Positions 3,754 through 56,182 of a stretch of 64,000 nt of DNA are shown here, piece by piece (the first letter of the stretch is position 1; every line of letters starts with the position of its first letter). A program made the translations under genes and the position numbers. The notes beneath the pieces are model-generated. The model worked only from the letters and a program-made list of their open reading frames with translations, searched no databases and was not told the origin of the DNA. Location of the stretch: positions 248,001-312,000 of IMG/VR virus record IMGVR_UViG_3300033997_000478. The stretch is one strand, 5' to 3'.

Positions 3754-3787
3754 CATAACGCCCCCGCCTTCGGGCGGGGGTTCTATG
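3754..3787. terminator. CATAA-flanked GC hairpin (UUCG loop), terminator-like repeat element
   Basis: CATAA-C-GCCCCCGCC-TTCG-GGCGGGGGT-T-CTATG, starting 4 nt after the stop at 3750. Confidence 0.75.
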
Positions 3788-15326: not shown

Positions 15327-15359
15327 CATAACGCCCCCTCCTTCGGGAGGGGGTTTATG
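15327..15359. terminator. CATAA..TTATG-flanked hairpin element
   Basis: CATAA-C-GCCCCCTCC-TTCG-GGAGGGGGT-TTATG. Confidence 0.75.
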
Positions 15360-15439
15360 CTGCCCTTTTTTCTTAGTCCTATCTTGTGTGCGCCGCTGTT
15401 GCGGCTAAGAATTTCTTCGCCCTCTTTGAGGAATGTTGC

Positions 15440-16609
15440 ATGTCCAACCATAATCCGATTGCCGCGCTGATGCATGCCCTGAGCAGCCTGCCTGTGCACC
15501 CCAACATCCAGGGTTTGAAGTATGTCATCGTCGATACCGTCAACGGTCCGCGTCGGTTGGACTTCAACGAACTGGTCACCCCGCCCAACCTGAACTTCTC
15601 GCCTGAGTTGATCGGCAAGAAGGTGCTGGAACTGGAAGGTCGTATCGATCAGTTGCAGGCCACGCAGGTCGAACTGGAACCGCTCTACGAAGACGTCAAG
15701 CCGTTTGAGCCGGAAGAGTCGGTGGCCATCGGCGACTGCGCCCTTGCCAATGGCTCCAAGGACCGCCACAACGTCGCTGTAGGCGCTTTCGCTGGCTACG
15801 CGCTGGAAGGTAGCGGCAACGTGGTCATCGGCCCGTATGCGGCCACTGGTGTGAACTACGAGCTGGATAACAGCGTGGTCATCGGCAGTGCAGCGCTGCC
15901 TGACGCAGAGCTGGACCTGACCAACGTCATCGTGGTGGGTGCGCATGCGCGTGCCACTGGTTCCAACCAGTTCGTACTTGGCCATAGCGGTACTGACGCA
16001 TACAACCTCAGCGGCCTGCATCGTCGTGCCGACGTGCGCGATTTCACCAGCATCGAAGATCTGGACTTGGGTCTGGACTTCATCTTGCAGGTCCCGGTGA
16101 TCCAGTATCAGGTCGATCCGCGTGAAGCGTACATCGACTGGTCCACCAAACCCGAAGAGCCGCAGTCGCCAGGCCCGGAACCGGAGCCTGTCACGCTGGC
16201 TGACTCCCAAGAAGCGATCATCGCCTACAACTGCCGCAAGGCACAGTGGGACCGCGATCAGAAGCAGTACACGCTGGACATGGCCAATTATGTCAGCGAA
16301 CTGAACGAGTGGTCGCGCGTTAACAACCTGGCCAACATCGAACGTACTGGCGAGTTCGCCGGTAAGCGTACGCATTACGGCTACAACGGTCGTGCCTTGC
16401 TGGACCTGTGTGAGCGCTTCGGCGTCAACCCGGCTCTGGTGCAAGATCATGCCGTGGCAGAAGGCGATGCACAGATCACGGTCAACGACGCCCACTTGGT
16501 GCCGGTGTTGATCCGCGCTGTGCAGCAACTGCACAAAACCATGCACAGCCCCGAGTACATCGACACGCTGATCAGCGCCATCGAAACCAAGAAGAACGCG
16601 TCGTCCTAA
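15440..16609 (+). CDS. Short fibre/adhesin with YadA-like head repeats and a degenerate S74-like chaperone domain, 389 aa
   Basis: Start ATG 15440 (GAGGA RBS). SVAIG, NVAVG, NVVIG, SVVIG and VIVVG repeats, then ADVRD...VIQY...HYG...LVPVLIRAVQQL. Confidence 0.6.
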   Translation: MSNHNPIAALMHALSSLPVHPNIQGLKYVIVDTVNGPRRLDFNELVTPPNLNFSPELIGKKVLELEGRIDQLQATQVELEPLYEDVKPFEPEESVAIGDCALANGSKDRHNVAVGAFAGYALEGSGNVVIGPYAATGVNYELDNSVVIGSAALPDAELDLTNVIVVGAHARATGSNQFVLGHSGTDAYNLSGLHRRADVRDFTSIEDLDLGLDFILQVPVIQYQVDPREAYIDWSTKPEEPQSPGPEPEPVTLADSQEAIIAYNCRKAQWDRDQKQYTLDMANYVSELNEWSRVNNLANIERTGEFAGKRTHYGYNGRALLDLCERFGVNPALVQDHAVAEGDAQITVNDAHLVPVLIRAVQQLHKTMHSPEYIDTLISAIETKKNASS

Positions 16610-16672: not shown

Positions 16673-19600
16673 ATGAGCCTGCTTTTGCAAAGCCTGGCTG
16701 CTCTGGAAACGGCTGGGTCCGTCCAGAACAATCAGCGCTTGACGCTTATCACTGCCGGTGGTCTGGTCAATGTCAATTGGGGAACGCTTTCCAATGCGGT
16801 GAGTGCGCCGCTGGATGCACGCCTGACGGCTTTGGAAGGCGGCGCTGGTGCGGCCAAGCCTTCGATCTGGCCAACGGCACGTACGATCTCTCTGACGGGC
16901 ATCGTCACCGGTTCGGTGGCACTGGATGGTAGCGGTGATGTATCGCTGGCCACCTCGATCGCCAATGGCGCACTGACCACGGCCAAGACTGCCGGTCTTC
17001 AATCTACGCTGGACAACCTGACCACTGGTCTGGGTAATCGTTGGGGCACGGGCGTCACCGAAGGTCCCAACCCTAGCATCTACACCGGCGATCTGAATCT
17101 GCTGGCGGGTGCGACGTTTGTACGCGCCACCAACCCAGCTACCAACTTGCCGACGGTGGGTGGTCCGAACTTCACGGTACTGACCAACGGTCTGATCAAC
17201 TACGGCAACCAGCTGGCTTTCGGTGCCGACACGCTCAGCTTCCGTACGCAGAACGCAGGTACTTGGGGTAGCTGGCGTAATCTCTGGCACTCGGGCAATC
17301 TGGACCCGTCCAACCTGCTGCTCAAGACCGACACTGCAACGGCCGCTTCCAAGTTGGCTACGGCTCGTTCGTTCTCGTTGACCGGTGCTGTGACTGCTTC
17401 GGCAGTGCAGTTTGATGGTTCGCAGAACGTCACGCTCAATACGTCGATCACCGATGGCTCGATTGCTATCGCCTCGGTATCGGGGCTGACCTCGGCATTG
17501 GCGTTGAAGGCTGAGCAGTACGGGCTGATTCCAGCTGGTCGTCCGTTGAACTCCAACGGCAACACTGGCTTCTACGGTCAGACGGTTGCAGCCCAAGCTA
17601 CGCTGGCTAACAACTACCCGGTGGCCGGTGCTTTGGGTGTACTCAACGTCACCCAGCAGACCGGTTACATCGAGCAGGAATACATCACCACCTCCAATGC
17701 GCATTACCGTCGCTTCTTCAACGGTAGTTCGTGGTCAGGCTGGGCGCGTCTGTGGAGTTCGGATGATTTCGATCCCACCTCCAAGTACGACAAGACCGGC
17801 GGTGTGATCAACGGTAACGTGACTGTCACCGGTACGGTGGCGTCCAACAACACGATTACCGGCACGACGTTCATCTCCACGGTCGCACCGACGGTCACGC
17901 CTCTGTGGCTGCTCTCCGGCGCCGGCTATACCGGTCGCACGCGCGGCATCCAGATGAACGAAGACTACGTGATGCTGGTCAACAACGAGACCAGTGGCAC
18001 GGCCAACTACAACCTGCGTCTGAGCAATGCTGGTCTGCTGGAACTGCGCACACCCACCAACACGCTCAGCGTGTGGCATGCGGGTAACTTCACCCCGGAC
18101 AGCCCGGTGGACAGCAGCGGTCAGATCCGTATCGGCCCCTCTGACGCAGACTCGGTTCGTTTCCGTAAGGACGGCTACTTCTCCGTTGCAGGCGGCGCCT
18201 GGAAGGCTCTGGGTGCAGGTGACTCCACCGCAGATCCGATTTTCAACACGATCTCCTTCGGCACTGCTTCCGGCGCGATGCTGGGTACCAGTGAATCGAA
18301 CACGGGTATCGGCGTTGCTGTCGGCGCGCCGGGAGCGCGCAAGTCCTTCTCCTTCGGCTCCAATGGTGACTTCACTGTTGGCAGCGGTCGTTTGATCGTT
18401 GGCAGCAACGTTGTCTGGCACGCTGGTAACTTTGACCCGTCCACCAAGTTGGGCACCACGGCTACTGCCGCGGCAGCGACCAAGCTCGCCACCGCTCGCA
18501 CGATCAACGGTGTGGCCTTTGACGGTACGGCAAATATCACCGTCCCCAGTAACGTCAATCCGGATGACTTCGTTAAGGTCATTCAGACTGCGGCCACGTA
18601 CACCAATGCCGATAGCCTGAACGGTAAGCTGGCGTATGCGGTTTCCGGCGGCACGGCCTTGGGTGTGCCTGAAGCCTACATGACCACGTGGAACTTCGGT
18701 GACAACGGTTCGCGTGATGGTCAGTTTGCTTGGACCTACAGCGCCACCAATCGCCTGTACTTCCGCAGTCGTCTGGACACGGGCAGCTCGTGGAAGCCGT
18801 GGTATCAGGTTTGGACCGCAGCTTCGTTCAATCCCAATACCAAGGCCGACATCCAAGACCCGGTGTTCAAGGGCACCGCCTACTTCGACGTCGACAACGG
18901 CTCAACGGCCAAGGGTCGCTTCATCGCTGGTGCCAGCAACGGTATCAACCTTGATGCGGTCAATGACGATGCCTCACAGTTCGCTCCGCTGAACCTGCGA
19001 GGTACAGCGGTAACGATTAACGGCAACACGCCGTGGACCAACGCCAACTTCGACCCGAACTCCAAGTTGAATGCCCGCGACGAACTGGGCGCAGTGGCTC
19101 GCACGCACAGCGACTGGAACACTGCTACGACCAACGGGTGGTGGATGGCTGCCAATGCAACCAACGCCCCGGTGGGTAACTGGCTGCTCGGTATTGTCAC
19201 TCAACACAACAACGATTGGATTCAGCAGGAGGTCTACGACTTCACCGGCGGCATCAGTGGTCCGAAGTGGTACCGTTGGAAGCTGGGCGGCACCTGGAGC
19301 GCGTGGACGCAGGACTTCAATGTCGGCGGCGCGCTGTACGCAGGTCGTATCTGGACCGGTTGGGACTCCGGCATCGGTGGTTCGATCTCCTGCTCCAACT
19401 GGTTCCGTTCTCAAGGCCAGACTGGCATCTACTTCGCCGACTACGGCGGCGGTTGGAACATGACCGACACCACGTATGTGCGCGCCTACAACGGCAAGCA
19501 GTGTGCGGCCGGTGACTTTGTCATCTCCTCCGACGTACGCCTGAAGACTGCGATCAATCCGCTGGAGTTCCGTGGCCGCTTGCGTCCTGTGCATTTCACG

Positions 19601-19855
19601 ATGCGTAAGGACGGTCGTCGCGACATGGGCTTCATCGCTGACGAAGTTGAGAAGCTCTATCCCGAAGCGGTTGGTGAAATCGAATGCGTCGAAGACGGTC
19701 CGCTCAAGGGCAAGATGATCAAGCAGCTGTCCCAGCAGAAGCTGGTGGCTGTGGTGTCCCATCAGGTCAACGCCGTTGAAGATGATGTCATTGCACTGCG
19801 TGCCGAATTGGCCGCGCTCCGGCAAGAGATTGCCGAGTTGAAGAACAACCGGTAA
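16673..19855 (+). CDS. Long tail fibre protein A (1060 aa) with a C-terminal peptidase S74 intramolecular chaperone
   Basis: WHxGNF and W..W fibre motifs, KLATARTINGVAFDG modules, SDVRLK autocleavage motif, and GFIADEV. Confidence 0.85.
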   Translation: MSLLLQSLAALETAGSVQNNQRLTLITAGGLVNVNWGTLSNAVSAPLDARLTALEGGAGAAKPSIWPTARTISLTGIVTGSVALDGSGDVSLATSIANGALTTAKTAGLQSTLDNLTTGLGNRWGTGVTEGPNPSIYTGDLNLLAGATFVRATNPATNLPTVGGPNFTVLTNGLINYGNQLAFGADTLSFRTQNAGTWGSWRNLWHSGNLDPSNLLLKTDTATAASKLATARSFSLTGAVTASAVQFDGSQNVTLNTSITDGSIAIASVSGLTSALALKAEQYGLIPAGRPLNSNGNTGFYGQTVAAQATLANNYPVAGALGVLNVTQQTGYIEQEYITTSNAHYRRFFNGSSWSGWARLWSSDDFDPTSKYDKTGGVINGNVTVTGTVASNNTITGTTFISTVAPTVTPLWLLSGAGYTGRTRGIQMNEDYVMLVNNETSGTANYNLRLSNAGLLELRTPTNTLSVWHAGNFTPDSPVDSSGQIRIGPSDADSVRFRKDGYFSVAGGAWKALGAGDSTADPIFNTISFGTASGAMLGTSESNTGIGVAVGAPGARKSFSFGSNGDFTVGSGRLIVGSNVVWHAGNFDPSTKLGTTATAAAATKLATARTINGVAFDGTANITVPSNVNPDDFVKVIQTAATYTNADSLNGKLAYAVSGGTALGVPEAYMTTWNFGDNGSRDGQFAWTYSATNRLYFRSRLDTGSSWKPWYQVWTAASFNPNTKADIQDPVFKGTAYFDVDNGSTAKGRFIAGASNGINLDAVNDDASQFAPLNLRGTAVTINGNTPWTNANFDPNSKLNARDELGAVARTHSDWNTATTNGWWMAANATNAPVGNWLLGIVTQHNNDWIQQEVYDFTGGISGPKWYRWKLGGTWSAWTQDFNVGGALYAGRIWTGWDSGIGGSISCSNWFRSQGQTGIYFADYGGGWNMTDTTYVRAYNGKQCAAGDFVISSDVRLKTAINPLEFRGRLRPVHFTMRKDGRRDMGFIADEVEKLYPEAVGEIECVEDGPLKGKMIKQLSQQKLVAVVSHQVNAVEDDVIALRAELAALRQEIAELKNNR
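18482..18547 (+). repeat. Fibre module KLATARTINGVAFDGTANITVP, repeated at 24048-24113
   Basis: Identical 22-aa module in both long fibres. Related ART(I/F)xLxGxVTGS modules recur in both genes. Confidence 0.8.
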
Positions 19856-19907: not shown

Positions 19908-22900
19908 ATGTCTCTCAATACGCTCAGCTTCAAGGGTTTTGCTTTCACTGAAAACCCGCAAAGCGCGCAGTACGTCTCCGTACGTACCGGGCCAGGGGAT
20001 GAGGACTTTGCCAACGTACTGCTGAGCGATCTGCGTACCTTCATCACCGCAGAGGTGGAGGTTCGTCTTGCTGCTCTGGAGGCCGGCGAGTCTGGGGGCG
20101 CCAAGCCCTCCATCTGGCCTGTGGCCCGCACGATGACGCTGTCCGGTCCGGTGACCGGTTCGGCTTCGTTTGACGGTTCGCAGAACTTCTCACTGAGCAC
20201 GTCCATTGCCGACGGTGCTCTGACGATTGCCAAGACCAATGGTCTGCAAGGACAACTGACCACGCTGCAAACCAACATCGACGGCAAGGCGCCGTTGGTG
20301 CACAGCCACATCGGCACCCAGCCGAACCTGAACTCGATTCCCGGCGGCGTCCTGCCGGTCGGCGCCGTTGTAGGTAGTGGCTCCACCGCTCTGGACGGAT
20401 TCACCAACCCGTTGTACCTGTCCGCCTATGATGGACAAACGCGTGCCTCGCAGTTGATCTTCGACAATGCTACCGATGAAGTAGGCTTCCGCCGCTTCAC
20501 CGCGGGCAACTGGCGATCGGTTCGCAAGATCTGGACTGAAGCTAACTTCGATCCGAGTGTCAAGGCCAGCACCGGCGGTAACACCTTCACCGGTCTGAAC
20601 ACCTTCGCCAATGGTCGGGTGGTGATCCGTGCTGACGTGGCTGCCACGCAGTCGGCGTTGCAGTTCCAGGATGAGTCGGCTGTGCTGCAAGGCATGGTCT
20701 ACTACAACCGCACCGACAAGGCCATGACGATCTATACGGCCGCAGGTGATGGCACCTCCAAGGTGATGTCACTCAAGCCCGACGGTCTGTACTGGGATGC
20801 CAAGAAGGTTTGGCATGCGGGGAACTTCGATCCGGCTACCTACAACTACATGACGGTCACGCCGACGTTGTACAACGCCAGCGCAGGTATCAACTGCGAC
20901 AATCTGGTTGTCGGCTCCAAGGCCTTCGTGCACAACGCCAACACCAACACGCCGGGTACGGCCGCCACCTATTGGCACATTGAAACTGTGCAGCTGGGTG
21001 ATGTGGCTGGTTCGCTGATCCAACGCGCCTACGCCGCTGACAGCAGCGAAATGTGGACGCGTGTGTATAACGCTGGTTGGAAAGCCTGGCGGCGGGTGTG
21101 GACCTCGGAGAACTTCAACCCGGTCAACAAGCTTGACGCCAACGCAGCGGCAGCCAGCGCACAGAAGCTCACCATTGCGCGTACGATCGCCCTGACGGGC
21201 GTCGTGACCGGTAGCGTGTCCTTTGATGGTAGCGCCAACGCAAGCATCACCACGGCCTTCTCAGGCGATGTCACCAACAGCGCCGGTGGCTTCATTGTTG
21301 CTGGCGGTGGTGCGGTGCAGGTTAACAACCCCAACGCCAGTTCGGCTTCGATCAAGATGGACTGGAACGGCGATATGCCGCGCTTGCGCATCGGTGGATC
21401 TGGCACCGGCTCGAACGCAACGTTCTTGATTGTGGGTCAAAGTGAAAAGACCCGCATGTCGTTGGACCTCAACGGCAACGCCATGTTCGCCGGCAATATC
21501 CTGGCCAACGGTGACAAGACGGTCTATCACTCTGGCAATCTGGACTTGACTGATTTCACCCGCGTGGGCACCACCAACCTGGGTAAGGTCGGTTCCACTA
21601 CGGTTGGTCCGGGTACGCTGAATTCACCTGCGGCATGGTCCAACCTGCCCACTGGCTTCTCCAGCTTCGTGCTTAACACCGTGGGCACGGCCAACGGCGC
21701 ACCGGGTGACGGCTACGGCTACTTCCACAAGATCGCCCAGCGTGATACGCAAGGCGGTTGGGCCGGTATCTGGCTGCCGCATCTGTTCAATGGCGCACAA
21801 GTCATCCAGGCGTACCTGGGTGGTGCCAACGACAGCACCTCATATGCTCGCTGGGCTAAGATCTGGAATGACACCAACCATGGTGCAGGTTCCGGTCTGG
21901 ATGCTGACTTGCTCGATGGTAAGGATGGCGGCTACTACCTGAGTAAGGACACCCTGCTCGGCGGTGCCAACATGGCCCGCAATGGTAGCTTTGAAAGTCA
22001 GTACAACAGCGGTCGTCCGTACTTCTGGAACTTGGGTGGCAATGCCACCGGTCGCAGTGGTTCGTTCGTGGTCAGCGCTGCTGGTCCGGCGGGTGTCGGT
22101 TTCCGCATTGATGCTACTTCGGCTACGGCCGGTCAGTACATCGACATGATGCAACCGCTGCTGGAAGACGGTACAGACCCGCGTCCGACTTGTGTACCCA
22201 ATCGCCCCTATACGGCCAGCTGCGACTTCCGCGGCACCGAAGGTGCGATGGTGCGCATGTACATCCAGTTCTACGACAGCAGCGATACGGTGATCGCCAC
22301 GGCCACCTCGCAGGACTTCACCGCTTCGGCCACGAACTACCAGCGCGCTTTCGTGACTGGTCGCGCACCGGCCAACGCTGTCAAGCTGCGCATGTACTGT
22401 CCGCGACTGCACAACAACGGTCTGGGTGGCGCCACGGTACCGCTGTTTGTGGAATACGCAGGTGCCTCGCTTCAAGAAGGTGACAGCTACAGCACCTTCC
22501 ATTATCCGGGCTCCTCGTTCCTGCGCAATGACATTGCCAATCTCCAGGACGTGCGCCTGGCAACGGGCAATGGTCGCGGTCTGCGCTTCTTCGACAACGA
22601 GCAGTACAAGATCTTCATGTCGGTGGCCACCGACGCAACCTACGGCGGCCGAATCGCAGGTGAAACCACCTCCGATTACAACATGTACTTCCGCATGGCC
22701 AGCGGCACCAACCGCGGTTTCGTGTTTGAGAAGGACAACGGCAACAAGCTGCTGTCGATCAATCCCAACGGTGTGCGTTCGGCGGTGGACATCACCGCAC
22801 CGATCATCACTGCAACCACGCAGTTCCAGGTGTCCAACCCGAACAACACCGCAGCTCGCGTGTGGATGGACTGGTTGAATGACAACCCGCGCATTCGTGT

Positions 22901-25049
22901 GGGTGGCAGTGGTGCCGGTGCAGCCGGTACGCTGCAGTTCACCTGGCCCAGTGAGACGGTCAACTTCAGCATCACCAATGCCGGTAACGCCGACCTGCGC
23001 GGTCAGCTGTCGGTACTGAAGCTGATCACCAAGAACGACCAAACCTCGTTGTTCGGTGACGGTGGTGCATCGATCCGTGGTACGGGCACCGGTAGCGTTG
23101 TGCTCTCCTCGGGCACTCAGGCCGGCGGTTACATCTACCTGCGACCCAACGGTGACACCGTCACCACCGGTCAGGCGGTGCTCTACGCCAACGGTCAGTT
23201 CGAGATGACCAGTGCCAAGGTGGGCATGGGTGTGGGTGCGGGCGGTGTCATGCTGGAGCTGGCAGGCGATCGTGCTTGGCAGTTCCGTCAGTCCGGCACG
23301 GGCGCTACTTCGGCGCTGGAGCTGTTTGACACCACTGGCGGTAAGCGGGTGGATTTCACCACCACTTCCAGTTCGAACAAGGTCAGTATCGATCCCAATA
23401 GTAGCACGGTCTCAGCTTCGACCTTCGCAGGTACGGCGACCAACGCAGCCAAGTGGACCACTGCTCGCAACCTCTACCTCCAGAACGATCTGGTGGGTAA
23501 TGTGGCGATCGATGGTAGCGCTGACATCTCGTTGAACGCCTACTCGCGTGCTTACACCACGGGCAACACGGGCAACACCTATCCCGGTCAATACGTCCGG
23601 GTGGCGTCCATCACGCTGGGCGCGCTGTACGAGGATTCCTCGGTAGCGCTTCAGTTCATGGGCTACGGCGATAGCGCCGGTACCGGCCGTTACGGTCGTG
23701 TGCGTTTCCGCGCCAAGCAACAAGTAGCTCTGCCGGGTCTGCCGTATGTGGACGTCTCCTTGGAGGCAGCCAACTACCTGAACCCGGATGACTTCGTTGC
23801 GGTGATCGGCGATACCTCCGCCTATCCGGTGAAGGTGGACCTGTTCATCAAGATGTCGGGTACGTACTCGGGTCTGAAGTGCACGGTCATGGGTCGCGGC
23901 GGTAGCCGTACGACTCAGGTGCTGGAGAACGACGGCTACGCTACGGCGCTGCCGGCGGGCACGCAAGTGGTGGGTGTGGCTGACGCCAGTCGCGTGTACG
24001 CAGGCACCTTCAACGGTGCTCTGTCGGGCAACGCAGCTACGGCGACGAAACTGGCCACGGCTCGCACGATCAACGGTGTGGCTTTCGATGGTACGGCCAA
24101 CATCACCGTACCGGCGACGTGGAACGGCGGCACGGTCAACGGCGCCATCAACATCTTCAACGGCACGTTGAACGCTCAGGCCTCGCACATCACCTTGGCG
24201 TGGAGCGGCGGCAGCACCCGTTGGGCACACGTGATGGAAAGCTCCGGTGATTACGCCATCTACGGCTACAATGCCAGCGGCGGCGCGCCGTACCAACAGC
24301 TGATCCTGCGCAACACCTCGTTGGCAGCAGCGGCAGACAAGTACCGTGCTTTGGAAGTTCAAGGCGGCATCAAGTCGGGTGGTGCTAATTCTGCGCTGAT
24401 CGTGGTCGACCGTGGTAACAATGCGGCCGAATATCACGCTTACGTGCAGGACAATGGTGGTTCGTGGGCCATCTGGCGACAGGGCTACGATGACATCTTC
24501 AAGGTTGCGGCGAGTGGCAAGATCGCGCAAGCAGGTGTCTTCTCCGCCGCACTGAGCACAGCTAACAGCCCGAACGTGTCGGCTGATCAGGCTTCCTTCC
24601 GCGCCTACGGCAACTACGGTGGCGGTTACGGTCTGATCGATGGCTCCTACCAGATCTGCATGTACTCGATCAGTGGCAACCTGAACTTCGGTTTTGGTTC
24701 CTCGGGTAATGCACCGTCGAAGGCCTCGTTGCGCAATGACGGTACGTTCTTCGCTACTGACTATGCTATCAACTCCGACGCCAGCCTGAAGGAGAACGTG
24801 GTCGAGTTGTTCTACAACGGGCGCCTGCGTCCGGTGGAGTTCGACTGGATCGACGGGAAGAAGCATGACCTGGGCTTCATCGCGCAGGAAGTGCAGAAGC
24901 TGTACCCCGATGCCGTTCAGCCCGATGAGGTTACCGGTAAGCTGCGTCTGTCGCCGATGAAGCTGATTGCGGTGTTGTCCTCGCAGGTCAACTCGCTGGA
25001 AGATCGTCTGGCCCAGCTCGAGGCTCTCGTGGCCTCGAAGATCCAATAG
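19908..25049 (+). CDS. Long tail fibre protein B (1713 aa) with an internal CBM-like domain and a C-terminal S74 chaperone
   Basis: AAGGA RBS. N-terminal GGAKPSIWP module shared with fibre A. NMARNGSFE...YTASCDFRG pattern, SDASLK and GFIAQEV. Confidence 0.85.
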   Translation: MSLNTLSFKGFAFTENPQSAQYVSVRTGPGDEDFANVLLSDLRTFITAEVEVRLAALEAGESGGAKPSIWPVARTMTLSGPVTGSASFDGSQNFSLSTSIADGALTIAKTNGLQGQLTTLQTNIDGKAPLVHSHIGTQPNLNSIPGGVLPVGAVVGSGSTALDGFTNPLYLSAYDGQTRASQLIFDNATDEVGFRRFTAGNWRSVRKIWTEANFDPSVKASTGGNTFTGLNTFANGRVVIRADVAATQSALQFQDESAVLQGMVYYNRTDKAMTIYTAAGDGTSKVMSLKPDGLYWDAKKVWHAGNFDPATYNYMTVTPTLYNASAGINCDNLVVGSKAFVHNANTNTPGTAATYWHIETVQLGDVAGSLIQRAYAADSSEMWTRVYNAGWKAWRRVWTSENFNPVNKLDANAAAASAQKLTIARTIALTGVVTGSVSFDGSANASITTAFSGDVTNSAGGFIVAGGGAVQVNNPNASSASIKMDWNGDMPRLRIGGSGTGSNATFLIVGQSEKTRMSLDLNGNAMFAGNILANGDKTVYHSGNLDLTDFTRVGTTNLGKVGSTTVGPGTLNSPAAWSNLPTGFSSFVLNTVGTANGAPGDGYGYFHKIAQRDTQGGWAGIWLPHLFNGAQVIQAYLGGANDSTSYARWAKIWNDTNHGAGSGLDADLLDGKDGGYYLSKDTLLGGANMARNGSFESQYNSGRPYFWNLGGNATGRSGSFVVSAAGPAGVGFRIDATSATAGQYIDMMQPLLEDGTDPRPTCVPNRPYTASCDFRGTEGAMVRMYIQFYDSSDTVIATATSQDFTASATNYQRAFVTGRAPANAVKLRMYCPRLHNNGLGGATVPLFVEYAGASLQEGDSYSTFHYPGSSFLRNDIANLQDVRLATGNGRGLRFFDNEQYKIFMSVATDATYGGRIAGETTSDYNMYFRMASGTNRGFVFEKDNGNKLLSINPNGVRSAVDITAPIITATTQFQVSNPNNTAARVWMDWLNDNPRIRVGGSGAGAAGTLQFTWPSETVNFSITNAGNADLRGQLSVLKLITKNDQTSLFGDGGASIRGTGTGSVVLSSGTQAGGYIYLRPNGDTVTTGQAVLYANGQFEMTSAKVGMGVGAGGVMLELAGDRAWQFRQSGTGATSALELFDTTGGKRVDFTTTSSSNKVSIDPNSSTVSASTFAGTATNAAKWTTARNLYLQNDLVGNVAIDGSADISLNAYSRAYTTGNTGNTYPGQYVRVASITLGALYEDSSVALQFMGYGDSAGTGRYGRVRFRAKQQVALPGLPYVDVSLEAANYLNPDDFVAVIGDTSAYPVKVDLFIKMSGTYSGLKCTVMGRGGSRTTQVLENDGYATALPAGTQVVGVADASRVYAGTFNGALSGNAATATKLATARTINGVAFDGTANITVPATWNGGTVNGAINIFNGTLNAQASHITLAWSGGSTRWAHVMESSGDYAIYGYNASGGAPYQQLILRNTSLAAAADKYRALEVQGGIKSGGANSALIVVDRGNNAAEYHAYVQDNGGSWAIWRQGYDDIFKVAASGKIAQAGVFSAALSTANSPNVSADQASFRAYGNYGGGYGLIDGSYQICMYSISGNLNFGFGSSGNAPSKASLRNDGTFFATDYAINSDASLKENVVELFYNGRLRPVEFDWIDGKKHDLGFIAQEVQKLYPDAVQPDEVTGKLRLSPMKLIAVLSSQVNSLEDRLAQLEALVASKIQ

Positions 25050-25097: not shown

Positions 25098-25502
25098 ATG
25101 AGCAATCCCAACAACGCACGTTTCGTGGATATGGGTGGCGGCAACATTGCCGAGTACATCTCCTTCCAGATCCAAATGAACTACAATCCCACCACCCAGC
25201 ATGTACGCGTGGTTTTTAACGGCGCGCCGTATATCCTCATGGGTACTGCTTACCAGAAGATCGGTGAAAAGCAGGACATCCTTGAGGCCGACCTGACGGG
25301 CTTGGAAGGGATGCGGTTGATTCCGCAGGGCGTGAAAGATCCGGTCACCGGGATGGACCTATCGGGTCTGTCGATCGGTGGTTTGATCCTGGCCCACAAG
25401 ATGGCCTATGACTACTTCTTCAACATCCGCGCCGGCACGTCCGGCTACACGGGGAAGAATACGATCATCGGTCCAGATCCGCAGTTCCCGCCCACGATCT
25501 AA
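25098..25502 (+). CDS. Tail-fibre accessory protein (134 aa)
   Basis: GAGG RBS. The DPVTGMDLSGLS motif resembles small proteins recalled downstream of fibres in Xanthomonas/Stenotrophomonas phages. Confidence 0.6.
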   Translation: MSNPNNARFVDMGGGNIAEYISFQIQMNYNPTTQHVRVVFNGAPYILMGTAYQKIGEKQDILEADLTGLEGMRLIPQGVKDPVTGMDLSGLSIGGLILAHKMAYDYFFNIRAGTSGYTGKNTIIGPDPQFPPTI

Positions 25503-25514
25503 AGGACTAGAGCC

Positions 25515-25988
25515 ATGCCATTGGGCACCAATCCAACACTGCTTCAAATCCAGGCGTTCTTTGGTGGCCCAGGCAATCTCAGGGCCTATTATCGTGGCGG
25601 TCCGTATGTACCGGACATTTCCGCCAATGCGGCGATCTCAACAGATCCCAACAGCTTGACCTTGCGCCAGTTCTCTGGCGCTGACAAGGTGCAGGACTGG
25701 TCTGTGAGTATGACGCCGACTTTCGTGGCAATTGCCAACAGCACCAACAACACTAGCGTGCAAATGACCATCACCGTCAACAACGCGCCTGGGCCGGCCA
25801 GCTATAACACCGTGGCCTTGCCTGGTGAAGGTATGCTCTGTTCTGTTGACAACGCAAACACCGCCGCCCCGATTGTTCGTGGTAGGCGCAGTACACAACA
25901 GCCCTCCTTCGAGGAAGGTTCGGTGCGAGCTGACGTCACGATCAATGGTGTTACCAAGTCGGCGGTTTCCCGCATGAACTTCGGCTAA
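25515..25988 (+). CDS. Putative fibre-tip adhesin 1 (157 aa; conserved N-terminal anchor, variable C-terminus)
   Basis: First about 58 aa closely match the 26060 gene (FGGPGNLRAYYRGGPYVPDISANA). Confidence 0.65.
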   Translation: MPLGTNPTLLQIQAFFGGPGNLRAYYRGGPYVPDISANAAISTDPNSLTLRQFSGADKVQDWSVSMTPTFVAIANSTNNTSVQMTITVNNAPGPASYNTVALPGEGMLCSVDNANTAAPIVRGRRSTQQPSFEEGSVRADVTINGVTKSAVSRMNFG

Positions 25989-26000
25989 GGTCGGGCATGG

Positions 26001-26030
26001 CTAAGGAGGTTTCGGCCTCCTTAGTTTATG
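26001..26030 (+). terminator. Hairpin plus TTTATG between the two tip genes
   Basis: CTAAGGAGGT-TTCG-GCCTCCTTAG-TTTATG. Confidence 0.7.
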
Positions 26031-26059
26031 TCCCTTCCTTTTTTCCTAGCAGTAGAAGT

Positions 26060-26632
26060 ATGCCTTTAGGTCTCAACCCCACCCTCATTCAAATTCGCGA
26101 CTTCTTCGGAGGTCCGGGTAATCTTCGTGCGTACTACCGCGGTGGTCCGTACGTGCCGGATATTTCGGCGAACGCCAACATCTCCACCGATCCCAATCAA
26201 TTGCGTTTGACGCAGTTCTCTTACGCTGACAAGATCACCTCACCACCTCTACCCAACTTCGGCAATGCCAGCGTTTCGGCTGACATCTTTGTTAGCGGTA
26301 ACGGTGGCGGCTGTAACAGCTACTTGGAAATCCGTCCCAACGGTATGGTCTACTCCTATTCGTCCAGTAACGGCGAAGGTAACCTATACCAGTGGTTGCC
26401 AGCCGGGCGTTCCCCTGGGGAATACATGGCCCGTCGTTCTACCAATGGCGGACCGTGGGAGGCATGGCAATCGCTTGCGTCGGTCTTCGGTGCAGCTTCT
26501 TCCTCGGCGTATTCCGACGGCTTCTACAGCGAATCCGATTCGCAGGAGTCGGTCGTACAGATCGGTTACGGCGGCAACGTACAAGCACAGGCCACCTTTA
26601 GTGCCTACTCCTCGGCCAACGGCCGCGGTTAA
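26060..26632 (+). CDS. Putative fibre-tip adhesin 2 (190 aa)
   Basis: Start moved to ATG 26060 by homology with the 25515 gene. Ser/Gly/Tyr-rich C-terminus unrelated to that of tip 1. Confidence 0.65.
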   Translation: MPLGLNPTLIQIRDFFGGPGNLRAYYRGGPYVPDISANANISTDPNQLRLTQFSYADKITSPPLPNFGNASVSADIFVSGNGGGCNSYLEIRPNGMVYSYSSSNGEGNLYQWLPAGRSPGEYMARRSTNGGPWEAWQSLASVFGAASSSAYSDGFYSESDSQESVVQIGYGGNVQAQATFSAYSSANGRG

Positions 26633-26644
26633 CAAGGACCACCT

Positions 26645-26896
26645 ATGGACATTCGCACCCTCGCCAAACAGGCGCGCCTGAAGCGCAACTGTTTACTTGA
26701 TGCGGCGGTGGGAGTTCTGAACCGACATCGCAATCAAGTGGACTTCGGTGTGAATCCGTCCCTTGGTCCTGATGAGGTTATCGAAGTGGCACACTTTGCG
26801 CAGTCACTGCGCGATGTGCCGCAGCAGATGGACTTCCCGAGCCTGATCATATGGCCAAACGTTCCACGATGCCTGCAAAAGCAAATCGTGGCCTAA
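26645..26896 (+). CDS. Phage tail-fibre assembly chaperone-like protein (83 aa)
   Basis: R.KRN.LL...LRDVPQQMDFP..I.WP..P matches the tail assembly chaperone C-terminal motif. Confidence 0.7.
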   Translation: MDIRTLAKQARLKRNCLLDAAVGVLNRHRNQVDFGVNPSLGPDEVIEVAHFAQSLRDVPQQMDFPSLIIWPNVPRCLQKQIVA

Positions 26897-26914: not shown

Positions 26915-27517
26915 ATGAGCGACTTTCATATCGACCGACGTTTCGATAAGCCGGGACATGAATCCCTCGTTGACTTGATCAACGACAGCAACAAGACGTA
27001 CATCAAGCCGGGGGAGATCGAAGGCGATCAGATCACTGCGGTCGAAGGTCTTCCATTGGGCTTGAATACGAGTGTGCGTATTCGCCTGAAAGGAGCAAAG
27101 GAAGGCGCCCCCTCATCCACGCTGTTTTACCGTCGACTGGACATCGGTAAGTATCTGGCCGATCGCGGTCCGTTCCCTTACGACCTCGAGCGTGAGGACA
27201 AGGACCAGCAAGAAATCCTTGATGCCATCAAGGCCCAGTACGGCGTGGAGCTGTCCCTCGAAGATGTTGGAATCATCTACAACTGGACCGATACGGCCCA
27301 GTACGTCATCTTGGTGATGTACTCGCGAAACCCGGTGTTCTACGGTGAGGTGCGTTTGCAAGGCAAGCCACCTTCGGACCTCAGTTGGGTGGTCGATGAG
27401 ATCATGCGTGACCTGACGCTGGCAGATGTCATGACCGGTACGGAAATCATTCCGGCCATTCAGGACGTCATCCCCAAGCAGATGCGCAAGCTCCGCATTA
27501 CTGACGTCAAGCTTTAA
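26915..27517 (+). CDS. gp131-family baseplate/tail protein (200 aa)
   Basis: LVDLINDSN...NTSVRI...TLFYRRLDI motif shared with the ORFs at 10533 and 10997. Confidence 0.6.
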   Translation: MSDFHIDRRFDKPGHESLVDLINDSNKTYIKPGEIEGDQITAVEGLPLGLNTSVRIRLKGAKEGAPSSTLFYRRLDIGKYLADRGPFPYDLEREDKDQQEILDAIKAQYGVELSLEDVGIIYNWTDTAQYVILVMYSRNPVFYGEVRLQGKPPSDLSWVVDEIMRDLTLADVMTGTEIIPAIQDVIPKQMRKLRITDVKL

Positions 27518-27518
27518 A

Positions 27519-27549
27519 CATAGCGGAGGTCTTCGGACCTCCGTTTATG
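27519..27549. terminator. CATAG..TTATG-flanked hairpin element
   Basis: CATAG-CGGAGGTC-TTCG-GACCTCCG-T-TTATG. Confidence 0.75.
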
Positions 27550-29635: not shown

Positions 29636-29668
29636 CATAACGCCCCCGCCCGTAGGCGGGGGCTTATG
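29636..29668. terminator. CATAA..TTATG-flanked hairpin at a convergent junction
   Basis: CATAA-C-GCCCCCGCC-CGTA-GGCGGGGGC-TTATG. Confidence 0.8.
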
Positions 29669-31689: not shown

Positions 31690-33789
31690 TCACTTACCCA
31701 GGCGGGCCAGAACCTGCGCGAGCTGCGACTCCAGATTGGCGATACGCAGTTCCTGCGACTGCACGACAGTGCGCAGCAGGGCGACCTCTTCCAGTGCTTG
31801 GTCAGCCGCTTCACCGGCAGCGAATGCCGATTCCATGGCCAGACCAGCGGTGTTGATCGCCAGACGCTTGGTCTTCTTGCCCGGCTCGGTGAACTCGCTG
31901 ACGTAATCGGCAGCCACCTCGTTGAGCTCCTGCGCAATCACGCCGCGCTGATGCTCATCGTTGCGCTTGAGGTTCCACTGCTTCCACTTCAGCAGGCGCC
32001 ACAGGGCACGCGCTTGAGCCGACTTGATGTTCTTCTTCAGTCGACGATCGGATGGCTGGAAACCACCGCCGGCGTAGATACGACCGTTGGAGGCAGTGAA
32101 GTTACCGTCGTTGCCGAAGGTGAACCACTTGTAGTTGTTGGACGGACCGGTACGCAGGCCCAGACCATTGCCACCGTCGTACAGGTAGTAAGCCCAGCCG
32201 CCGAGGGTGATCGAGTTCACGCGCGCATCGGAGTTGATCACGATGCGGTTGTTGATCTGGTTCTGCAGCGGGTTGATGGCAATCACCTGCACCAGCTGCC
32301 GACCGCGCATCGGAGTCAGATAACGGTCGTTGGCGTTACCACCTTCCGCTTCACCTTGAGTGGCGATCGGATAGTTCTCCACCGAACCCAGACCGACCTG
32401 TGCTTTGGTCGTAGCGTGCGGGTTGCTGCTGTTGTTCATGTGGTTGGTCAGTGCCGCACCAATGCCGTTGGTGATCTGCTGCGCAGTGCGCAGCGGCGTC
32501 ATGAACGTGGCGTTGTCAGTCGCACCCTGCGCCTGAGCCTGGGTGGCGGTCGGGTAATTGTCAACATTACCCAAGCCGACCTGAGCCTTGGTCACCTGGT
32601 GGGGGTTGCTGATGTTGGCGATGTGGGCCTGCAGAGCATTGCCCGCCACTGCATCAATCAGGGACCGACCACCTTGCGGAGTCAGGAACAGGTTGTTGGC
32701 CGTACCGGCCGTGGCTTCAGGAACCGTAGCGGTCTTGAAGTTGTCCACGTTACCCAAACCGACTTGCGCCTTGGTGGTGGCGTGCGGGTTGTTGGTATTG
32801 CCGATGTGCGCGTTGAGCGGATTGACCGCTTGGGCGGTGATTGCCGCTGCGGTCAGCACGGCCGACATGTAACCATCGCCCGTGCCCTGCTGGGCTTGGG
32901 TGGTGGTGGCCATCGGGTTGTTCACCACGCTACCCAGACCCACCTGTGCCTTGGTGACACCGTGGGGGTTGTTGGTGTTGTTGATGTGCGCAGTCAGGGC
33001 GTTGCCCACCAATACCTGGATCTGCTGACGACCGCGCAGCGGGGTCATGTACAGGTTGTTGGCGTTGCCGTCTTCGGCTTCGGCCTGCGTGGCAATGCGG
33101 TAGTTCTCGACCAGACCCAAACCGACCTGGGCCTTGGTGACCGCATGCGGGTTGTTCTTGTCGTTGATGTGCTCTTGGAAGTTGGCCTGCAGCTGATTGA
33201 TCAGCGCACGCAGCACGGCATCTTGAAGATCCACGTACTGACGCATCTCATCAAACGCTGCCTGGTCACCCAGCAGAATCGCACGACGCACCTGCTCGAC
33301 AGCGGCCACGAGGTATTCGAAACCGAACACGTCGCCGATGTCGTGCAAGTGGGCGGCCGGCGGGAAGTACTCCGGCACATCGATCAGGTCACCCCAGTGA
33401 ACCTTGCGGTTGTCCAGGTCCAGACCGTCCAGCAGCTGCTGGATGACGGTAGCCGACAGGCTGTAGACGTCACCCACCGCGTGGTAGGAGAACTTCAGGT
33501 CCAGACCACCACGGTAGGTATCGGGAATGAAGATGACCGAGCAGACTTCCTGGCCAGATTGCAGCGAGGGCTTGGGCACCATGTGCACCGGCTTGTAGTC
33601 CACGTCCGGAACCAGTTCACGGCCAGACGTAGCATCCACCAGTACCATGTTGCGGGTGTAGAAGGCACCGCGCGAGGGGACGAACGCGCGGTTGCCGGCG
33701 GCTGCGATACGTACCGGTTCGTCCCCGACGAAATTCGTCGGGGCTTCACCAGTCAGATCGAGCGGGAGTTGAAGAACGGGGGGATTCAT
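31690..33789 (-). CDS. Tail fibre protein C (699 aa): 5 His-repeats and a C-terminal S74 chaperone
   Basis: H.....NPH..TKAQVGLG.V.N repeats, SDRRLKK motif, and GVIAQEL. Confidence 0.85.
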   Translation of the reverse strand: MNPPVLQLPLDLTGEAPTNFVGDEPVRIAAAGNRAFVPSRGAFYTRNMVLVDATSGRELVPDVDYKPVHMVPKPSLQSGQEVCSVIFIPDTYRGGLDLKFSYHAVGDVYSLSATVIQQLLDGLDLDNRKVHWGDLIDVPEYFPPAAHLHDIGDVFGFEYLVAAVEQVRRAILLGDQAAFDEMRQYVDLQDAVLRALINQLQANFQEHINDKNNPHAVTKAQVGLGLVENYRIATQAEAEDGNANNLYMTPLRGRQQIQVLVGNALTAHINNTNNPHGVTKAQVGLGSVVNNPMATTTQAQQGTGDGYMSAVLTAAAITAQAVNPLNAHIGNTNNPHATTKAQVGLGNVDNFKTATVPEATAGTANNLFLTPQGGRSLIDAVAGNALQAHIANISNPHQVTKAQVGLGNVDNYPTATQAQAQGATDNATFMTPLRTAQQITNGIGAALTNHMNNSSNPHATTKAQVGLGSVENYPIATQGEAEGGNANDRYLTPMRGRQLVQVIAINPLQNQINNRIVINSDARVNSITLGGWAYYLYDGGNGLGLRTGPSNNYKWFTFGNDGNFTASNGRIYAGGGFQPSDRRLKKNIKSAQARALWRLLKWKQWNLKRNDEHQRGVIAQELNEVAADYVSEFTEPGKKTKRLAINTAGLAMESAFAAGEAADQALEEVALLRTVVQSQELRIANLESQLAQVLARLGK

Positions 33790-43802: not shown

Positions 43803-43837
43803 CATAAGCCCCCTCCCGGACGGGAGGGGGCGTTATG
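43803..43837. terminator. CATAA..TTATG-flanked hairpin at a convergent junction (reverse orientation)
   Basis: CATAA-GCCCCCTCCCG-GA-CGGGAGGGGGC-G-TTATG. Confidence 0.8.
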
Positions 43838-49227: not shown

Positions 49228-49263
49228 CATAAGCCCCCGCCCGTGATGGGCGGGGGCGCTATG
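49228..49263. terminator. CATAA..CTATG-flanked hairpin at a convergent junction (reverse orientation)
   Basis: CATAA-GCCCCCGCCC-GTGAT-GGGCGGGGGC-G-CTATG. Confidence 0.8.
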
Positions 49264-56147: not shown

Positions 56148-56182
56148 CATAACGCCCCCTCCCGGATGGGAGGGGGCTTATG
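56148..56182. terminator. CATAA..TTATG-flanked hairpin at a convergent junction
   Basis: CATAA-C-GCCCCCTCCC-GGAT-GGGAGGGGGC-TTATG. Confidence 0.8.

What the first reader, a model, noticed from the sequence alone, without database searches (positions are those of the whole stretch)
25515..26632. Two alternative fibre-tip proteins: constant anchor, unrelated C-termini, separately punctuated
Seen: both ORFs share about 58 N-terminal aa with a long identical run (FFGGPGNLRAYYRGGPYVPDISANA), but their codons differ at many synonymous positions, pointing to an old duplication under purifying selection. The C-termini are unrelated. A hairpin+TATG element lies between them. They follow two S74 fibres and precede a tail assembly chaperone. 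Known analogy: T-even gp38 adhesins cap gp37 after chaperone removal. Inference: interchangeable receptor-binding caps for the same or paralogous fibre ends, giving mixed-specificity virions or regulated host range without DNA inversion.
Basis: partly seen in the sequence, partly recalled or inferred. Interest (0 to 1): 0.6.

Follow-up and report, generated by a model that had tools for sequence, protein, structure and literature searches.

The report
Swappable end-caps for phage tail fibres
Two small neighbouring genes of a giant phage share a conserved 59-residue head joined to unrelated tails. They belong to a very large unnamed family encoded right after tail-fibre genes, most likely exchangeable host-binding caps that plug onto fibre ends.

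Summary
ORFs 25515-25988 (157 aa) and 26060-26632 (190 aa; the true start is 26060, not 25997) share 49/59 N-terminal residues. Synonymous sites are saturated (pS 0.80, pN 0.15) and the C-termini show no sequence similarity.

The shared head is a new, unnamed N-terminal module. It hits about 2,470 protein clusters, always at residues 1-60 of 150-350 aa proteins, with no Pfam, NCBIfam or PDB match.

- **Gene position.** In 28 of 46 viral loci the gene starts within 150 nt of the end of a fibre gene carrying an S74 self-cleaving chaperone. Most other loci follow chaperone-less fibres that stop where S74 cleavage would occur.
- **Co-variation.** Fibre-end motif class matches module subclass in 36 of 36 distinct pairs.
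- **Cassette exchange.** The C-terminal domains are confident beta-sandwiches. They are swapped precisely at the module boundary between phages that are otherwise 97-99% identical.
- **Link to gp38.** Some family members carry T-even gp38 adhesin or glycine-rich domains.

Best reading: gp38-like detachable fibre-end adhesins, probably one per fibre. The hairpin+TATG is genome-wide punctuation, not special to this pair. This is a new variant of a known kind.

The parts
16673..19855 (+). Tail fibre A (1060 aa) with a C-terminal S74 intramolecular chaperone. The predicted cleavage serine is residue 953, and the mature end reads ...GDFVIS.
   Evidence: Pfam PF13884 at residues 953-1000; tail-fibre PHROGs; end motif. 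The last ~65 mature residues are conserved with an unrelated phage (L009) that also encodes a p134 homologue and a module protein.
19908..25049 (+). Tail fibre B (1713 aa) with a C-terminal S74 chaperone. The predicted cleavage serine is residue 1623, and the mature end reads ...TDYAIN.
   Evidence: Pfam PF13884 at residues 1623-1670; end motif. In relative L007/L041 a fibre with a similar end is followed directly by a module protein.
25098..25502 (+). p134, a 134-aa protein of unknown function (phrog_25696) that travels with the tip genes in this jumbo-phage clade.
   Evidence: PHROG hit. Adjacent to tips in RTH11, L005, L006, L007, L009 and LucasX. Absent from phiXF1, PhiXhv-16 and a Vibrio phage that do have the module, so it is not the module's general partner.
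25515..25691 (+). Tip A N-terminal docking module (residues 1-59).
   Evidence: 49/59 identical to tip B. Profile of the module finds 2,470 clusters, always at residues 1-60. Low pLDDT when folded alone.
25692..25988 (+). Tip A C-terminal domain (type A), an Ig-like beta-sandwich, plus the stop codon.
   Evidence: pLDDT about 90 for residues 60-157. Ig/CBM-like fold matches only. Replaced by a divergent allele in L090: pS 0.75 against 0.03-0.08 in the flanks.
26001..26030 (+). GC-rich hairpin (9-bp stem) followed by TTTATG. It is terminator-like and carries the phiKZ-type late-promoter motif TATG.
   Evidence: Fold z -4.0. One of 24 hairpin+TATG sites in the window. TATG follows hairpins 24 times, against 0-9 for permuted 4-mers. 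Conserved in L088, L090, L006 and L033.
26060..26236 (+). Tip B N-terminal docking module (residues 1-59).
   Evidence: Residues specific to this slot are conserved between the window and L006 even though the C-domain differs.
26237..26632 (+). Tip B C-terminal domain (type B), a beta-sandwich ending in GRG, plus the stop codon.
   Evidence: pLDDT about 90 for residues 62-190. Generic sandwich matches and a Y_Y_Y-like fold also seen in uncharacterised phage proteins. Homology with L006 stops at 26232 and resumes at 26645, where L006 carries a type C domain instead.
26645..26896 (+). Short (83-aa) tail-fibre assembly chaperone-like protein.
   Evidence: PF16778 Phage_tail_APC at 34.3 bits, above the cut-off; tail fibre assembly PHROGs. 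Present in the window, L006, L007, L088 and L090; absent in L005, L089, L091, RTH11 and LucasX, whatever the tip type.
31690..33789 (-). Third S74-type fibre (698-699 aa) of the same host-recognition cluster. No tip gene is adjacent to it.
   Evidence: PF13884. The mature end ...GGGFQP precedes SDRRLK.

Best explanation
The two ORFs are paralogous members of a very large, unnamed family of small phage proteins. Each has a conserved ~59-residue N-terminal docking module and an exchangeable C-terminal domain.

Proposed mechanism:
1. The tail fibres trimerise with the help of their C-terminal S74 chaperone, which then cuts itself off.
2. The docking module is disordered on its own. It folds onto the newly exposed, conserved C-terminal end of the mature fibre.
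3. The variable beta-sandwich domain then forms the outermost tip that touches the host surface, as T2/S16 gp38 does on processed gp37.

The window's phage has two such tips for its two tandem fibres. A thin two-residue co-variation suggests tip A goes with fibre A and tip B with fibre B. The C-terminal domains are traded between phages as cassettes by recombination at the module/domain junction, which retargets the fibre without changing it.

Shown: the shared module, its family size, its gene position, co-variation with fibre ends, the cassette swaps, the folds, and gp38-type domains in some members. Inferred: physical docking, retention in the virion, and receptor binding.
For: 1. Module family: 2,470 cluster representatives at E<=1e-3 and 411 at E<=1e-10. 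In the 150 best representatives listed, the module lies at the N-terminus (residues 1-60 in nearly all) of mostly 150-350 aa proteins.
2. Position: in 28 of 46 IMG/VR loci with enough upstream sequence, the first module gene starts within 150 nt (mostly within 33 nt) of the end of an ORF ending in an S74 domain. S74 hits lie upstream 36 times and downstream 3 times.
3. Most remaining loci follow fibres without S74 that stop at ...GNVTAYGT, the motif that precedes the cleavage serine elsewhere.
4. The same gene order holds in isolated phages: phiXF1, phiM9 gp131/gp132, JC1 gp57/58 and gp59/60, and a T7-like contig.
5. Co-variation: fibre ends of the [FY]x[ILV]x type pair with 'STDPN'-type modules in 8/8 pairs. 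GN[IV]TAY-type ends pair with 'IPTSG'-type modules in 28/28 pairs. Fisher p is 3e-8, uncorrected.
6. Within jumbo genomes that hold both end types, both module types are present.
7. Cassette swaps: L005 and L091 are 96.6-98.7% identical over 17 kb except for the tip C-domain (B versus A) and one internal fibre segment. The fibre's distal 230 residues are identical. Between the window and L006, the break falls exactly at codon 58 and after the stop. Allelic replacement of the C-domains occurs between near-identical relatives.
8. Module subtype follows the gene slot, not the C-domain type.
9. Folds: the C-domains are confident beta-sandwiches and the modules have low confidence alone.
10. Of 146 members scanned, 5 carry Gly_rich_2, 2 carry Pfam GP38, and 17 carry PKD/SprB-like Ig domains. 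P0135 is the module plus a GP38 domain: 31.3 bits against a cut-off of 25, and E 4e-4 to S16 gp38 chain 6f45_D. It is encoded straight after a short fibre.
Against: - No direct evidence of binding or of virion presence.
- In JC1 virion mass spectrometry the family member gp60 was not detected, but neither was its fibre gp59 (PMC9144972).
- Stoichiometry is not 1:1 everywhere. The window has three S74 fibres and two tips; LucasX has three and one.
- In KVP40-like Vibrio phages the gene lies far from fibre genes. In PhiXhv-16 it lies beside a gp5-like hub protein.
- Fibre end and module are closely linked on the DNA, and the two classes may each be a single old lineage. The 36/36 co-variation could therefore reflect co-inheritance.
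- The C-domains have no recognisable ligand site.
- In the window, p134 separates the fibres from the tips.
Confidence: 0.55

Rival explanations
1. The proteins are trans-acting assembly factors or transient caps. They would bind the fibre end during folding or after S74 release but not stay in the infectious virion, like T4 gp38 or the Alteromonas phage A5/V22 fibre chaperones.
For: The gene position right after the fibre gene is also typical of fibre chaperones. About a third of the family follows fibres that lack an S74 chaperone in cis. JC1 virion proteomics did not list gp60. Separately encoded chaperones that act as fibre 'caps' are documented (PMC10579305).
Against: The proteins have no helical IMC-like core and no Tfa or S74 Pfam match. 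The C-domain is swapped (A versus B) while the fibre's distal 230 residues stay identical, which does not fit a chaperone whose variable part must match its client. Ig/PKD-like and gp38-type receptor-binding domains are outward-facing modules. The window already encodes S74 domains and a separate Tfa-like protein.
Confidence: 0.2
2. The proteins are accessory decoration proteins that attach elsewhere on the tail, such as the baseplate, fibre shaft or hub. They would add weak Ig-like adhesion, like Hoc or the Ig domains of tail tube proteins, rather than capping fibre ends.
For: Tip A's domain is Ig-like and matches the lambda tail tube Ig domain among many others. In PhiXhv-16 and L011 the module genes lie next to a gp5-like hub protein inside the baseplate block. 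In KVP40-like phages they lie far from fibres.
Against: Immediate adjacency to the 3' end of fibre genes holds in most loci across unrelated phage types. The module subclass co-varies with the fibre's C-terminal motif. Every module-bearing phage genome checked also holds S74 fibres.
Confidence: 0.12
3. One reading: both tips compete for the same fibre end, so one burst contains virions of mixed specificity, or expression of the second tip is separately regulated by the hairpin+TATG element.
For: The two modules are 83% identical. Fibres A and B have the same class of end. A terminator-like hairpin plus a promoter-like TATG separates the genes and is conserved. The window has three S74 fibres but two tips.
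Against: Slot-specific module residues (positions 5, 10, 13, 14, 40, 47, 55) are kept between the window and L006 although pS between them is 0.56-0.61, which suggests distinct partners. In five genome types of this clade (window, L005/L091, L089, RTH11, L007), tip classes and numbers match the two + strand fibres; LucasX, with two such fibres and one tip, is an exception. JC1 has tandem fibre/tip pairs. The hairpin+TATG occurs 24 times in 64 kb, so it is not a special switch.
Confidence: 0.13

Closest known systems
T2/T6/S16-type gp38 adhesin on long tail fibre gp37 (Pfam PF05268; PDB 6F45)
   Same: Both are small proteins encoded after the distal fibre gene, with an N-terminal attachment part and a C-terminal host-binding part. 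S16 gp37 is predicted to carry an IMC-like C-terminal chaperone complex (PMC10579305). That T2-type gp37 is processed at its C-terminus before gp38 caps it is my recollection, not checked here. The adhesin is modular and is the main host-range determinant (PMC3157838, title and abstract listed). Two members of the present family carry a GP38 domain behind the docking module.
   Different: Tip A and tip B have no GP38 Pfam match and no glycine-rich domain; their C-domains are beta-sandwiches. The docking module has no detectable similarity to gp38 or to any PDB chain. The family spans podo-, T4-like, jumbo and other phages, and often occurs in two to four copies per locus.
Mu/P2/lambda-type tail fibre assembly proteins (Tfa; PF16778, PF02413)
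   Same: Both are encoded just downstream of the fibre gene, have a two-part design with one conserved and one variable half, and are associated with the fibre tip.
   Different: The tips have no Tfa Pfam or PHROG match; the adjacent 83-aa ORF is the Tfa-like gene. The variable half here changes while the fibre's distal end stays identical. It consists of Ig/PKD/gp38-like domains, not a fibre-matching chaperone domain.
Separately encoded IMC-like fibre chaperones acting as transient caps (Alteromonas phages V22 gp27 and A5 gp9; PMC10579305)
   Same: Both are small proteins encoded after a fibre gene and proposed to sit on the distal end of the trimer. Both are relevant to the S74-less fibres that many family members follow.
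   Different: Those chaperones have a helical core with beta-hairpin tentacles and resemble S74 IMC domains. The tips here have a short disordered module plus a beta-sandwich and no S74 similarity.
Invertible tail-fibre segments (Mu Gin/S-U, P1 Cin) and shufflons
   Same: Both offer two alternative host-specificity modules behind a constant part. This comparison rests on recall of the literature, not on a test here.
   Different: There is no invertase and no inverted repeats here. Both genes are complete, co-oriented and separately translated, and the diversity arises by recombination between phages.

Membership tests
Unnamed N-terminal docking-module family (partly covered by phrog_30374) | Conserved ~60-residue module at the extreme N-terminus (FGG ... 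YYRGG.YVP ... F.GA). | tested here: met
   Both ORFs match phrog_30374 (E 1e-6 and 1e-3). The profile built from them and relatives finds 2,470 clusters with the module at the N-terminus (residues 1-60 in nearly all of the 150 best listed). Alignment A4 shows R27, G29, V32, P33 and F53 invariant.
Unnamed N-terminal docking-module family (partly covered by phrog_30374) | Gene lies directly downstream of a tail-fibre gene whose mature C-terminus carries the conserved end motif, with or without S74. | tested here: met
   Family: 28 of 46 loci lie within 150 nt of an S74 ORF, and most others follow S74-less fibres. Window: the tips follow two S74 fibres, with one small gene (p134) in between.
Unnamed N-terminal docking-module family (partly covered by phrog_30374) | Physical docking of the module on the fibre end. 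| not testable with these tools
Only indirect co-variation is available.
T-even gp38 adhesins (PF05268) | Sequence match to the GP38 model. | tested here: not met
   Tip A and tip B have 0 Pfam families at E<=0.1. Only 2 of 146 family members match.
T-even gp38 adhesins (PF05268) | Glycine-rich (polyglycine-II) receptor-binding domain. | tested here: not met
   The models are ordinary beta-sandwiches. Glycine-rich domains occur in other members, not in these two.
T-even gp38 adhesins (PF05268) | Caps the distal fibre tip in the virion and binds the receptor. | not testable with these tools
   This needs proteomics, cryo-EM or binding assays.
Tail fibre assembly chaperones (Tfa; PF16778/PF02413) | Match to Tfa models. 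| tested here: not met
   The tips have no hits in Pfam or in the tail-assembly PHROGs. The neighbouring 83-aa ORF does match (34.3 bits).
IMC-like trans chaperones / Peptidase_S74 | Helical core with beta-hairpin tentacle, or S74 sequence similarity. | tested here: not met
   No PF13884 hit. The predicted secondary structure is two tiny helices plus a beta-sandwich.
Ig-like phage decoration domains (Hoc, tail tube Ig, Big/PKD) | Ig-like beta-sandwich fold. | tested here: inconclusive
   Tip A gives many Ig-like Foldseek matches at E 3.5e-4 to 3e-3, including the lambda tail tube Ig domain. Tip B's best match is Z 5.1. A shared fold alone shows neither membership nor function.

The most novel reading that the evidence does not exclude
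The 59-residue module is a near-universal 'plug' for the mature C-terminal end of IMC/S74-type (and related chaperone-less) tail fibres across jumbo, T4-like, T7-like and other phages. Nature uses it to hang any distal domain (Ig, PKD, Y_Y_Y-like sandwich, gp38-type glycine-rich adhesin) on an unchanged fibre. Module subtypes (STDPN versus IPTSG) would encode which fibre end is plugged. That would be an unrecognised, widespread second layer of receptor-binding modularity and a ready-made handle for retargeting phages.
Probability: 0.45. Interest if true: 0.75.

Novelty: new variant of a known kind. Interest (0 to 1): 0.62.

Why it matters
Host range of tailed phages is usually read from the fibre gene itself. 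If a separate small protein forms the real tip on the very common S74-type fibres, host-range prediction from fibre sequence alone would miss the determinant. It would also show a natural plug-and-socket system: a conserved 59-residue plug with exchangeable heads. Such a system could be used to retarget phages against plant-pathogenic Xanthomonas and other bacteria without rebuilding long trimeric fibres. The family is large (thousands of clusters), has no Pfam or NCBIfam model, and is annotated 'hypothetical' or wrongly ('cell wall mannoprotein'), so naming it would improve many annotations. The near-isogenic pairs found here (L005/L091, window/L006, window/L090) are natural swap experiments.

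Tried and rejected
- **Complex prediction:** I submitted the fibre A mature end x3 (alignment A6) with the tip A module x3 (alignment A4).
- **PDB sequence search:** profiles A1 and A4 of the module gave no credible hit.
- **Fold searches:** Foldseek against PDB for tip B found nothing at E<=1e-3, and the VIA wide search peaked at Z 5.1. Only a generic sandwich can be claimed.
- **NCBIfam:** nothing for the tips, p134, the chaperone-like ORF or four longer family members.
- **Source names:** ten clusters gave none beyond 'hypothetical protein'.
- **p134 as the general partner:** rejected. It is absent from phiXF1, PhiXhv-16 and Vibrio phage 6E35.1a. A weak Atlas lead to DUF7936 gave no alignment.
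- **Chaperone linked to tip type B:** rejected. L005 has type B without the chaperone-like gene, and L006 has type C with it.
- **Simple rule linking tip C-domain type to the fibre's distal domain:** none found.
- **Virion proteomics in the literature:** the LucasX and phiM9 papers contain no mass spectrometry. JC1 data are uninformative because the partner fibre was also undetected.
- **Wide alignment of fibre ends (A5):** too divergent (17% column identity) to serve as an MSA, so it was not used.
- **Not used:** The look-up of sequencing runs and read laying.
Full report
**Setting.** The window is bases 248001-312000 of a complete 324,428-bp phage record with direct terminal repeats. Its nearest cultured relatives are the Xanthomonas jumbo phages RTH11 and LucasX. 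A preprint on nucleus-forming (Chimalliviridae) phages mentions LucasX once (not read, so its membership is unconfirmed), and the LucasX paper reports five putative RNA polymerases. The window's own genome also encodes an RNA polymerase beta-like fragment. The finding lies inside a large host-recognition cluster:

- fibre A (16673-19855) and fibre B (19908-25049), both ending in Peptidase_S74 self-cleaving chaperone domains;
- a 134-aa protein of unknown function, p134;
- the two ORFs in question;
- an 83-aa Phage_tail_APC chaperone-like ORF;
- DUF7941 and DUF7208-type virion proteins;
- on the other strand, a DUF1353 protein, a third S74 fibre and a fourth fibre-like protein.

The first 59 residues of the two ORFs are 49/59 identical (E 7e-34), with a 25-residue identical run. 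The DNA is only 69.5% identical, and 33 conserved residues use different codons. pS is 0.80 (saturated) and pN is 0.147. The two copies are more diverged at silent sites than each is from its orthologue in relative L006 (pS 0.56-0.61), so the duplication predates that split. After residue 59 no sequence similarity remains. The second gene starts at 26060, not 25997, because all homologues start with MPLG and the upstream ATG lies in the hairpin and is not conserved. The genome has only these two copies.

**The shared part is a new, very common module.** A profile of the 60 N-terminal residues was scored against 1.84 billion cluster representatives. It found 2,470 proteins at E<=1e-3 and 411 at E<=1e-10. 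In the 150 best representatives listed, the module is at the N-terminus (residues 1-60 in nearly all) and the proteins are short, mostly 150-350 aa. There is no Pfam, NCBIfam or PDB match. The only library hit is phrog_30374, of unknown function. Sources call these proteins hypothetical or, in Vibrio phages, 'cell wall mannoprotein'.

**It is tied to the 3' end of fibre genes.**
- Of 53 IMG/VR loci, 46 have at least 1.5 kb upstream of the module gene. In 28 of these the first module gene begins within 150 nt, mostly within 33 nt, of the stop of an ORF whose C-terminus is an S74 domain. S74 hits lie upstream 36 times and downstream 3 times.
- Most remaining loci follow fibres without S74 that stop at ...GN(V/I)TAYGT. 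That is the motif which precedes the cleavage serine in S74 fibres. Two more loci had an S74 domain that my seed model missed.
- The same order is seen in cultured phages of different kinds: phiXF1 (S74 fibre, then module protein), phiM9 gp131/gp132, the Burkholderia podophage JC1 (gp57/gp58 and gp59/gp60 in tandem) and a T7-like contig.
- Exceptions exist. In KVP40-like Vibrio phages the gene is far from the fibres, and in PhiXhv-16 it lies beside a gp5-like hub protein. Both genomes do contain S74 fibres.

**Module subtype co-varies with the fibre's mature end.** Among 36 distinct adjacent pairs, fibres ending [FY]x[ILV]x before the cleavage serine all have 'STDPN'-type modules (8/8). Fibres ending GN[IV]TAY all have 'IPTSG'-type modules (28/28). 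Fisher p is 3e-8. This is not corrected for phylogeny, and the two elements are linked on the DNA, so it is suggestive only. Within the jumbo clade it also holds inside genomes. L005, L089, L091 and RTH11 have one fibre of each end type and one tip of each module type. The window, L088, L090 and L007 have two fibres of the first type and two tips of that type. LucasX has one tip for two such fibres, so the rule is not strict. Two module positions (13-14) track whether the fibre end is A-like or B-like across genomes. That hints that tip A goes with fibre A and tip B with fibre B, but this is thin.

**The C-terminal domains are exchangeable cassettes.** In this clade three unrelated C-domain types (A, B, and an Ig-like type C with a SprB/PKD-like motif) occur in the pairs AB, AC, CB, C'B, C'A and C'C.
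- L005 and L091 are 96.6-98.7% identical over about 17 kb, except for the tip C-domain (B versus A) and one internal fibre-1 segment. Homology ends at codon ~53 and resumes after the stop. The last 230 mature residues of that fibre are identical.
- Between the window and L006, homology stops at 26232 (codon 58 of tip B) and resumes at 26645; L006 carries type C there.
- Between the window and L090 the flanking genes have pS 0.03-0.08, but the tip A C-domain has pS 0.75 and 58% identity. Between the window and L088 the tip B C-domain has pS 0.66.
- The module subtype follows the gene slot, not the C-domain.

This is the signature of a host-range determinant. It argues against a chaperone whose variable half must match its fibre.

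**Structure.** AlphaFold2 gives confident beta-sandwiches for both C-domains (pLDDT about 90) and low confidence for the modules alone (38-68). That pattern would fit a segment that folds on a partner. Tip A is Ig/CBM-like. Tip B is a generic sandwich closest to Y_Y_Y-type domains and to uncharacterised phage proteins. No function follows from these folds.

**Link to gp38.** Of 146 family members scanned, 9 have K319L-like PKD, 8 SprB, 5 Gly_rich_2 and 2 Pfam GP38 domains. P0135 is the module followed by a GP38 domain: 31.3 bits against a cut-off of 25, and E 4e-4 to S16 gp38 chain 6f45_D. It is encoded with overlapping stop and start after a 149-aa S74-less fibre ending ...GDITAYGTV, near a Phage_tail_APC gene and an S74 fibre. 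S16 gp37 is itself predicted to carry an IMC-like C-terminal chaperone (PMC10579305). The window's two proteins themselves fail the GP38 sequence and glycine-rich criteria.

**The hairpin+TATG.** The element between the genes folds well (z -4.0) and is conserved with an invariant stem in four relatives. It is one of 24 perfect hairpin+TATG sites in the window, on both strands and often palindromic (CATA-hairpin-TATG). TATG follows hairpins 24 times, against 0-9 for permuted 4-mers. In phiKZ the late promoter consensus is TATG, with the G as the start site (PMC4666361). The element is therefore ordinary genome punctuation: terminator-like, perhaps also a late start. It is not evidence of special regulation of tip B.

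**Verdict.** Most likely (0.55) the two ORFs are detachable fibre-end proteins. Each would have a conserved plug for the processed fibre C-terminus and an exchangeable outward-facing domain, probably one tip per fibre.

Rivals:
- transient assembly cap not kept in the virion (0.2);
- decoration attached elsewhere on the tail (0.12);
- two competing caps for one fibre end, or a regulated switch (0.13).

None of the binding steps is shown. This is a new variant of a known kind (gp38-like adhesins): a previously unnamed docking module of very wide distribution.

Noticed in passing
window 18544-18839 (fibre A, about residues 624-722); also L005 813-1045 versus L091 1747-2045: An internal ~80-100-residue segment of fibre A is a second swap hot spot. 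It is replaced between the window and L088, and between the otherwise 97-99% identical L005 and L091, while the fibre's distal 230 residues stay identical.
   Followed up: partly
window 22813-24006 (fibre B): About 1.2 kb of fibre B has no counterpart in the 94%-identical relative L090, whose fibre is 1313 aa instead of 1713 aa. This is a large in-frame length polymorphism of the shaft.
   Followed up: no
window, 24 sites, e.g. 3757-3787, 15330-15359, 27522-27549, 29639-29668, 43806-43837, 49231-49263, 56151-56182: GC-rich perfect hairpins are flanked by CATA on the left and TATG on the right, so the motif reads TATG after the hairpin on both strands. They look like bidirectional terminator/promoter punctuation of a phiKZ-like transcription system.
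   Followed up: partly
L046 (IMG/VR contig) 5373-7549: Four module genes lie in tandem directly after two S74 fibres. L034 has three. Tandem arrays of these tips recur outside the window's clade.
   Followed up: no
L050-L054, L062, L064, L066-L072, L094 2421-2870: These short fibres have no S74 domain and end exactly at the motif that precedes the S74 cleavage serine in other fibres. Each is followed at once by a module gene. How they fold without the cis chaperone is open.
   Followed up: partly
window 25515-25691 versus 26060-26236: Silent-site difference between the paralogous modules (pS 0.80; 0.86 in L006) is at or above the 0.75 expected at saturation. This may be chance with 43 sites, or selection against recombination between the tandem repeats.
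   Followed up: no
window 10997-12760 and 26915-27517: Two DUF7941 proteins sit in the same cluster. The longer one (587 aa) adds He_PIG Ig domains. A 663-aa Laminin_G_3 lectin-like protein (13330-15321) and a tailspike-like 407-aa ORF (15386-16609) lie just upstream of fibre A.
   Followed up: no
L087 (Burkholderia phage JC1) 4271-4783; L098 (phiM9) 5001-6146: JC1 gp58 and phiM9 gp132 keep the start (LP.SGP.S...) and end (P.S...F.G) of the module but lack the YYRGG core. The superfamily is therefore wider than the profile used here.
   Followed up: no
window 26645-26896: The chaperone-like ORF is only 83 aa and matches just the C-terminal part of Tfa models (Pfam profile positions 30-59 of 60; PHROG positions 78-151 of 152). 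It is present or absent among close relatives independently of tip type.
   Followed up: partly
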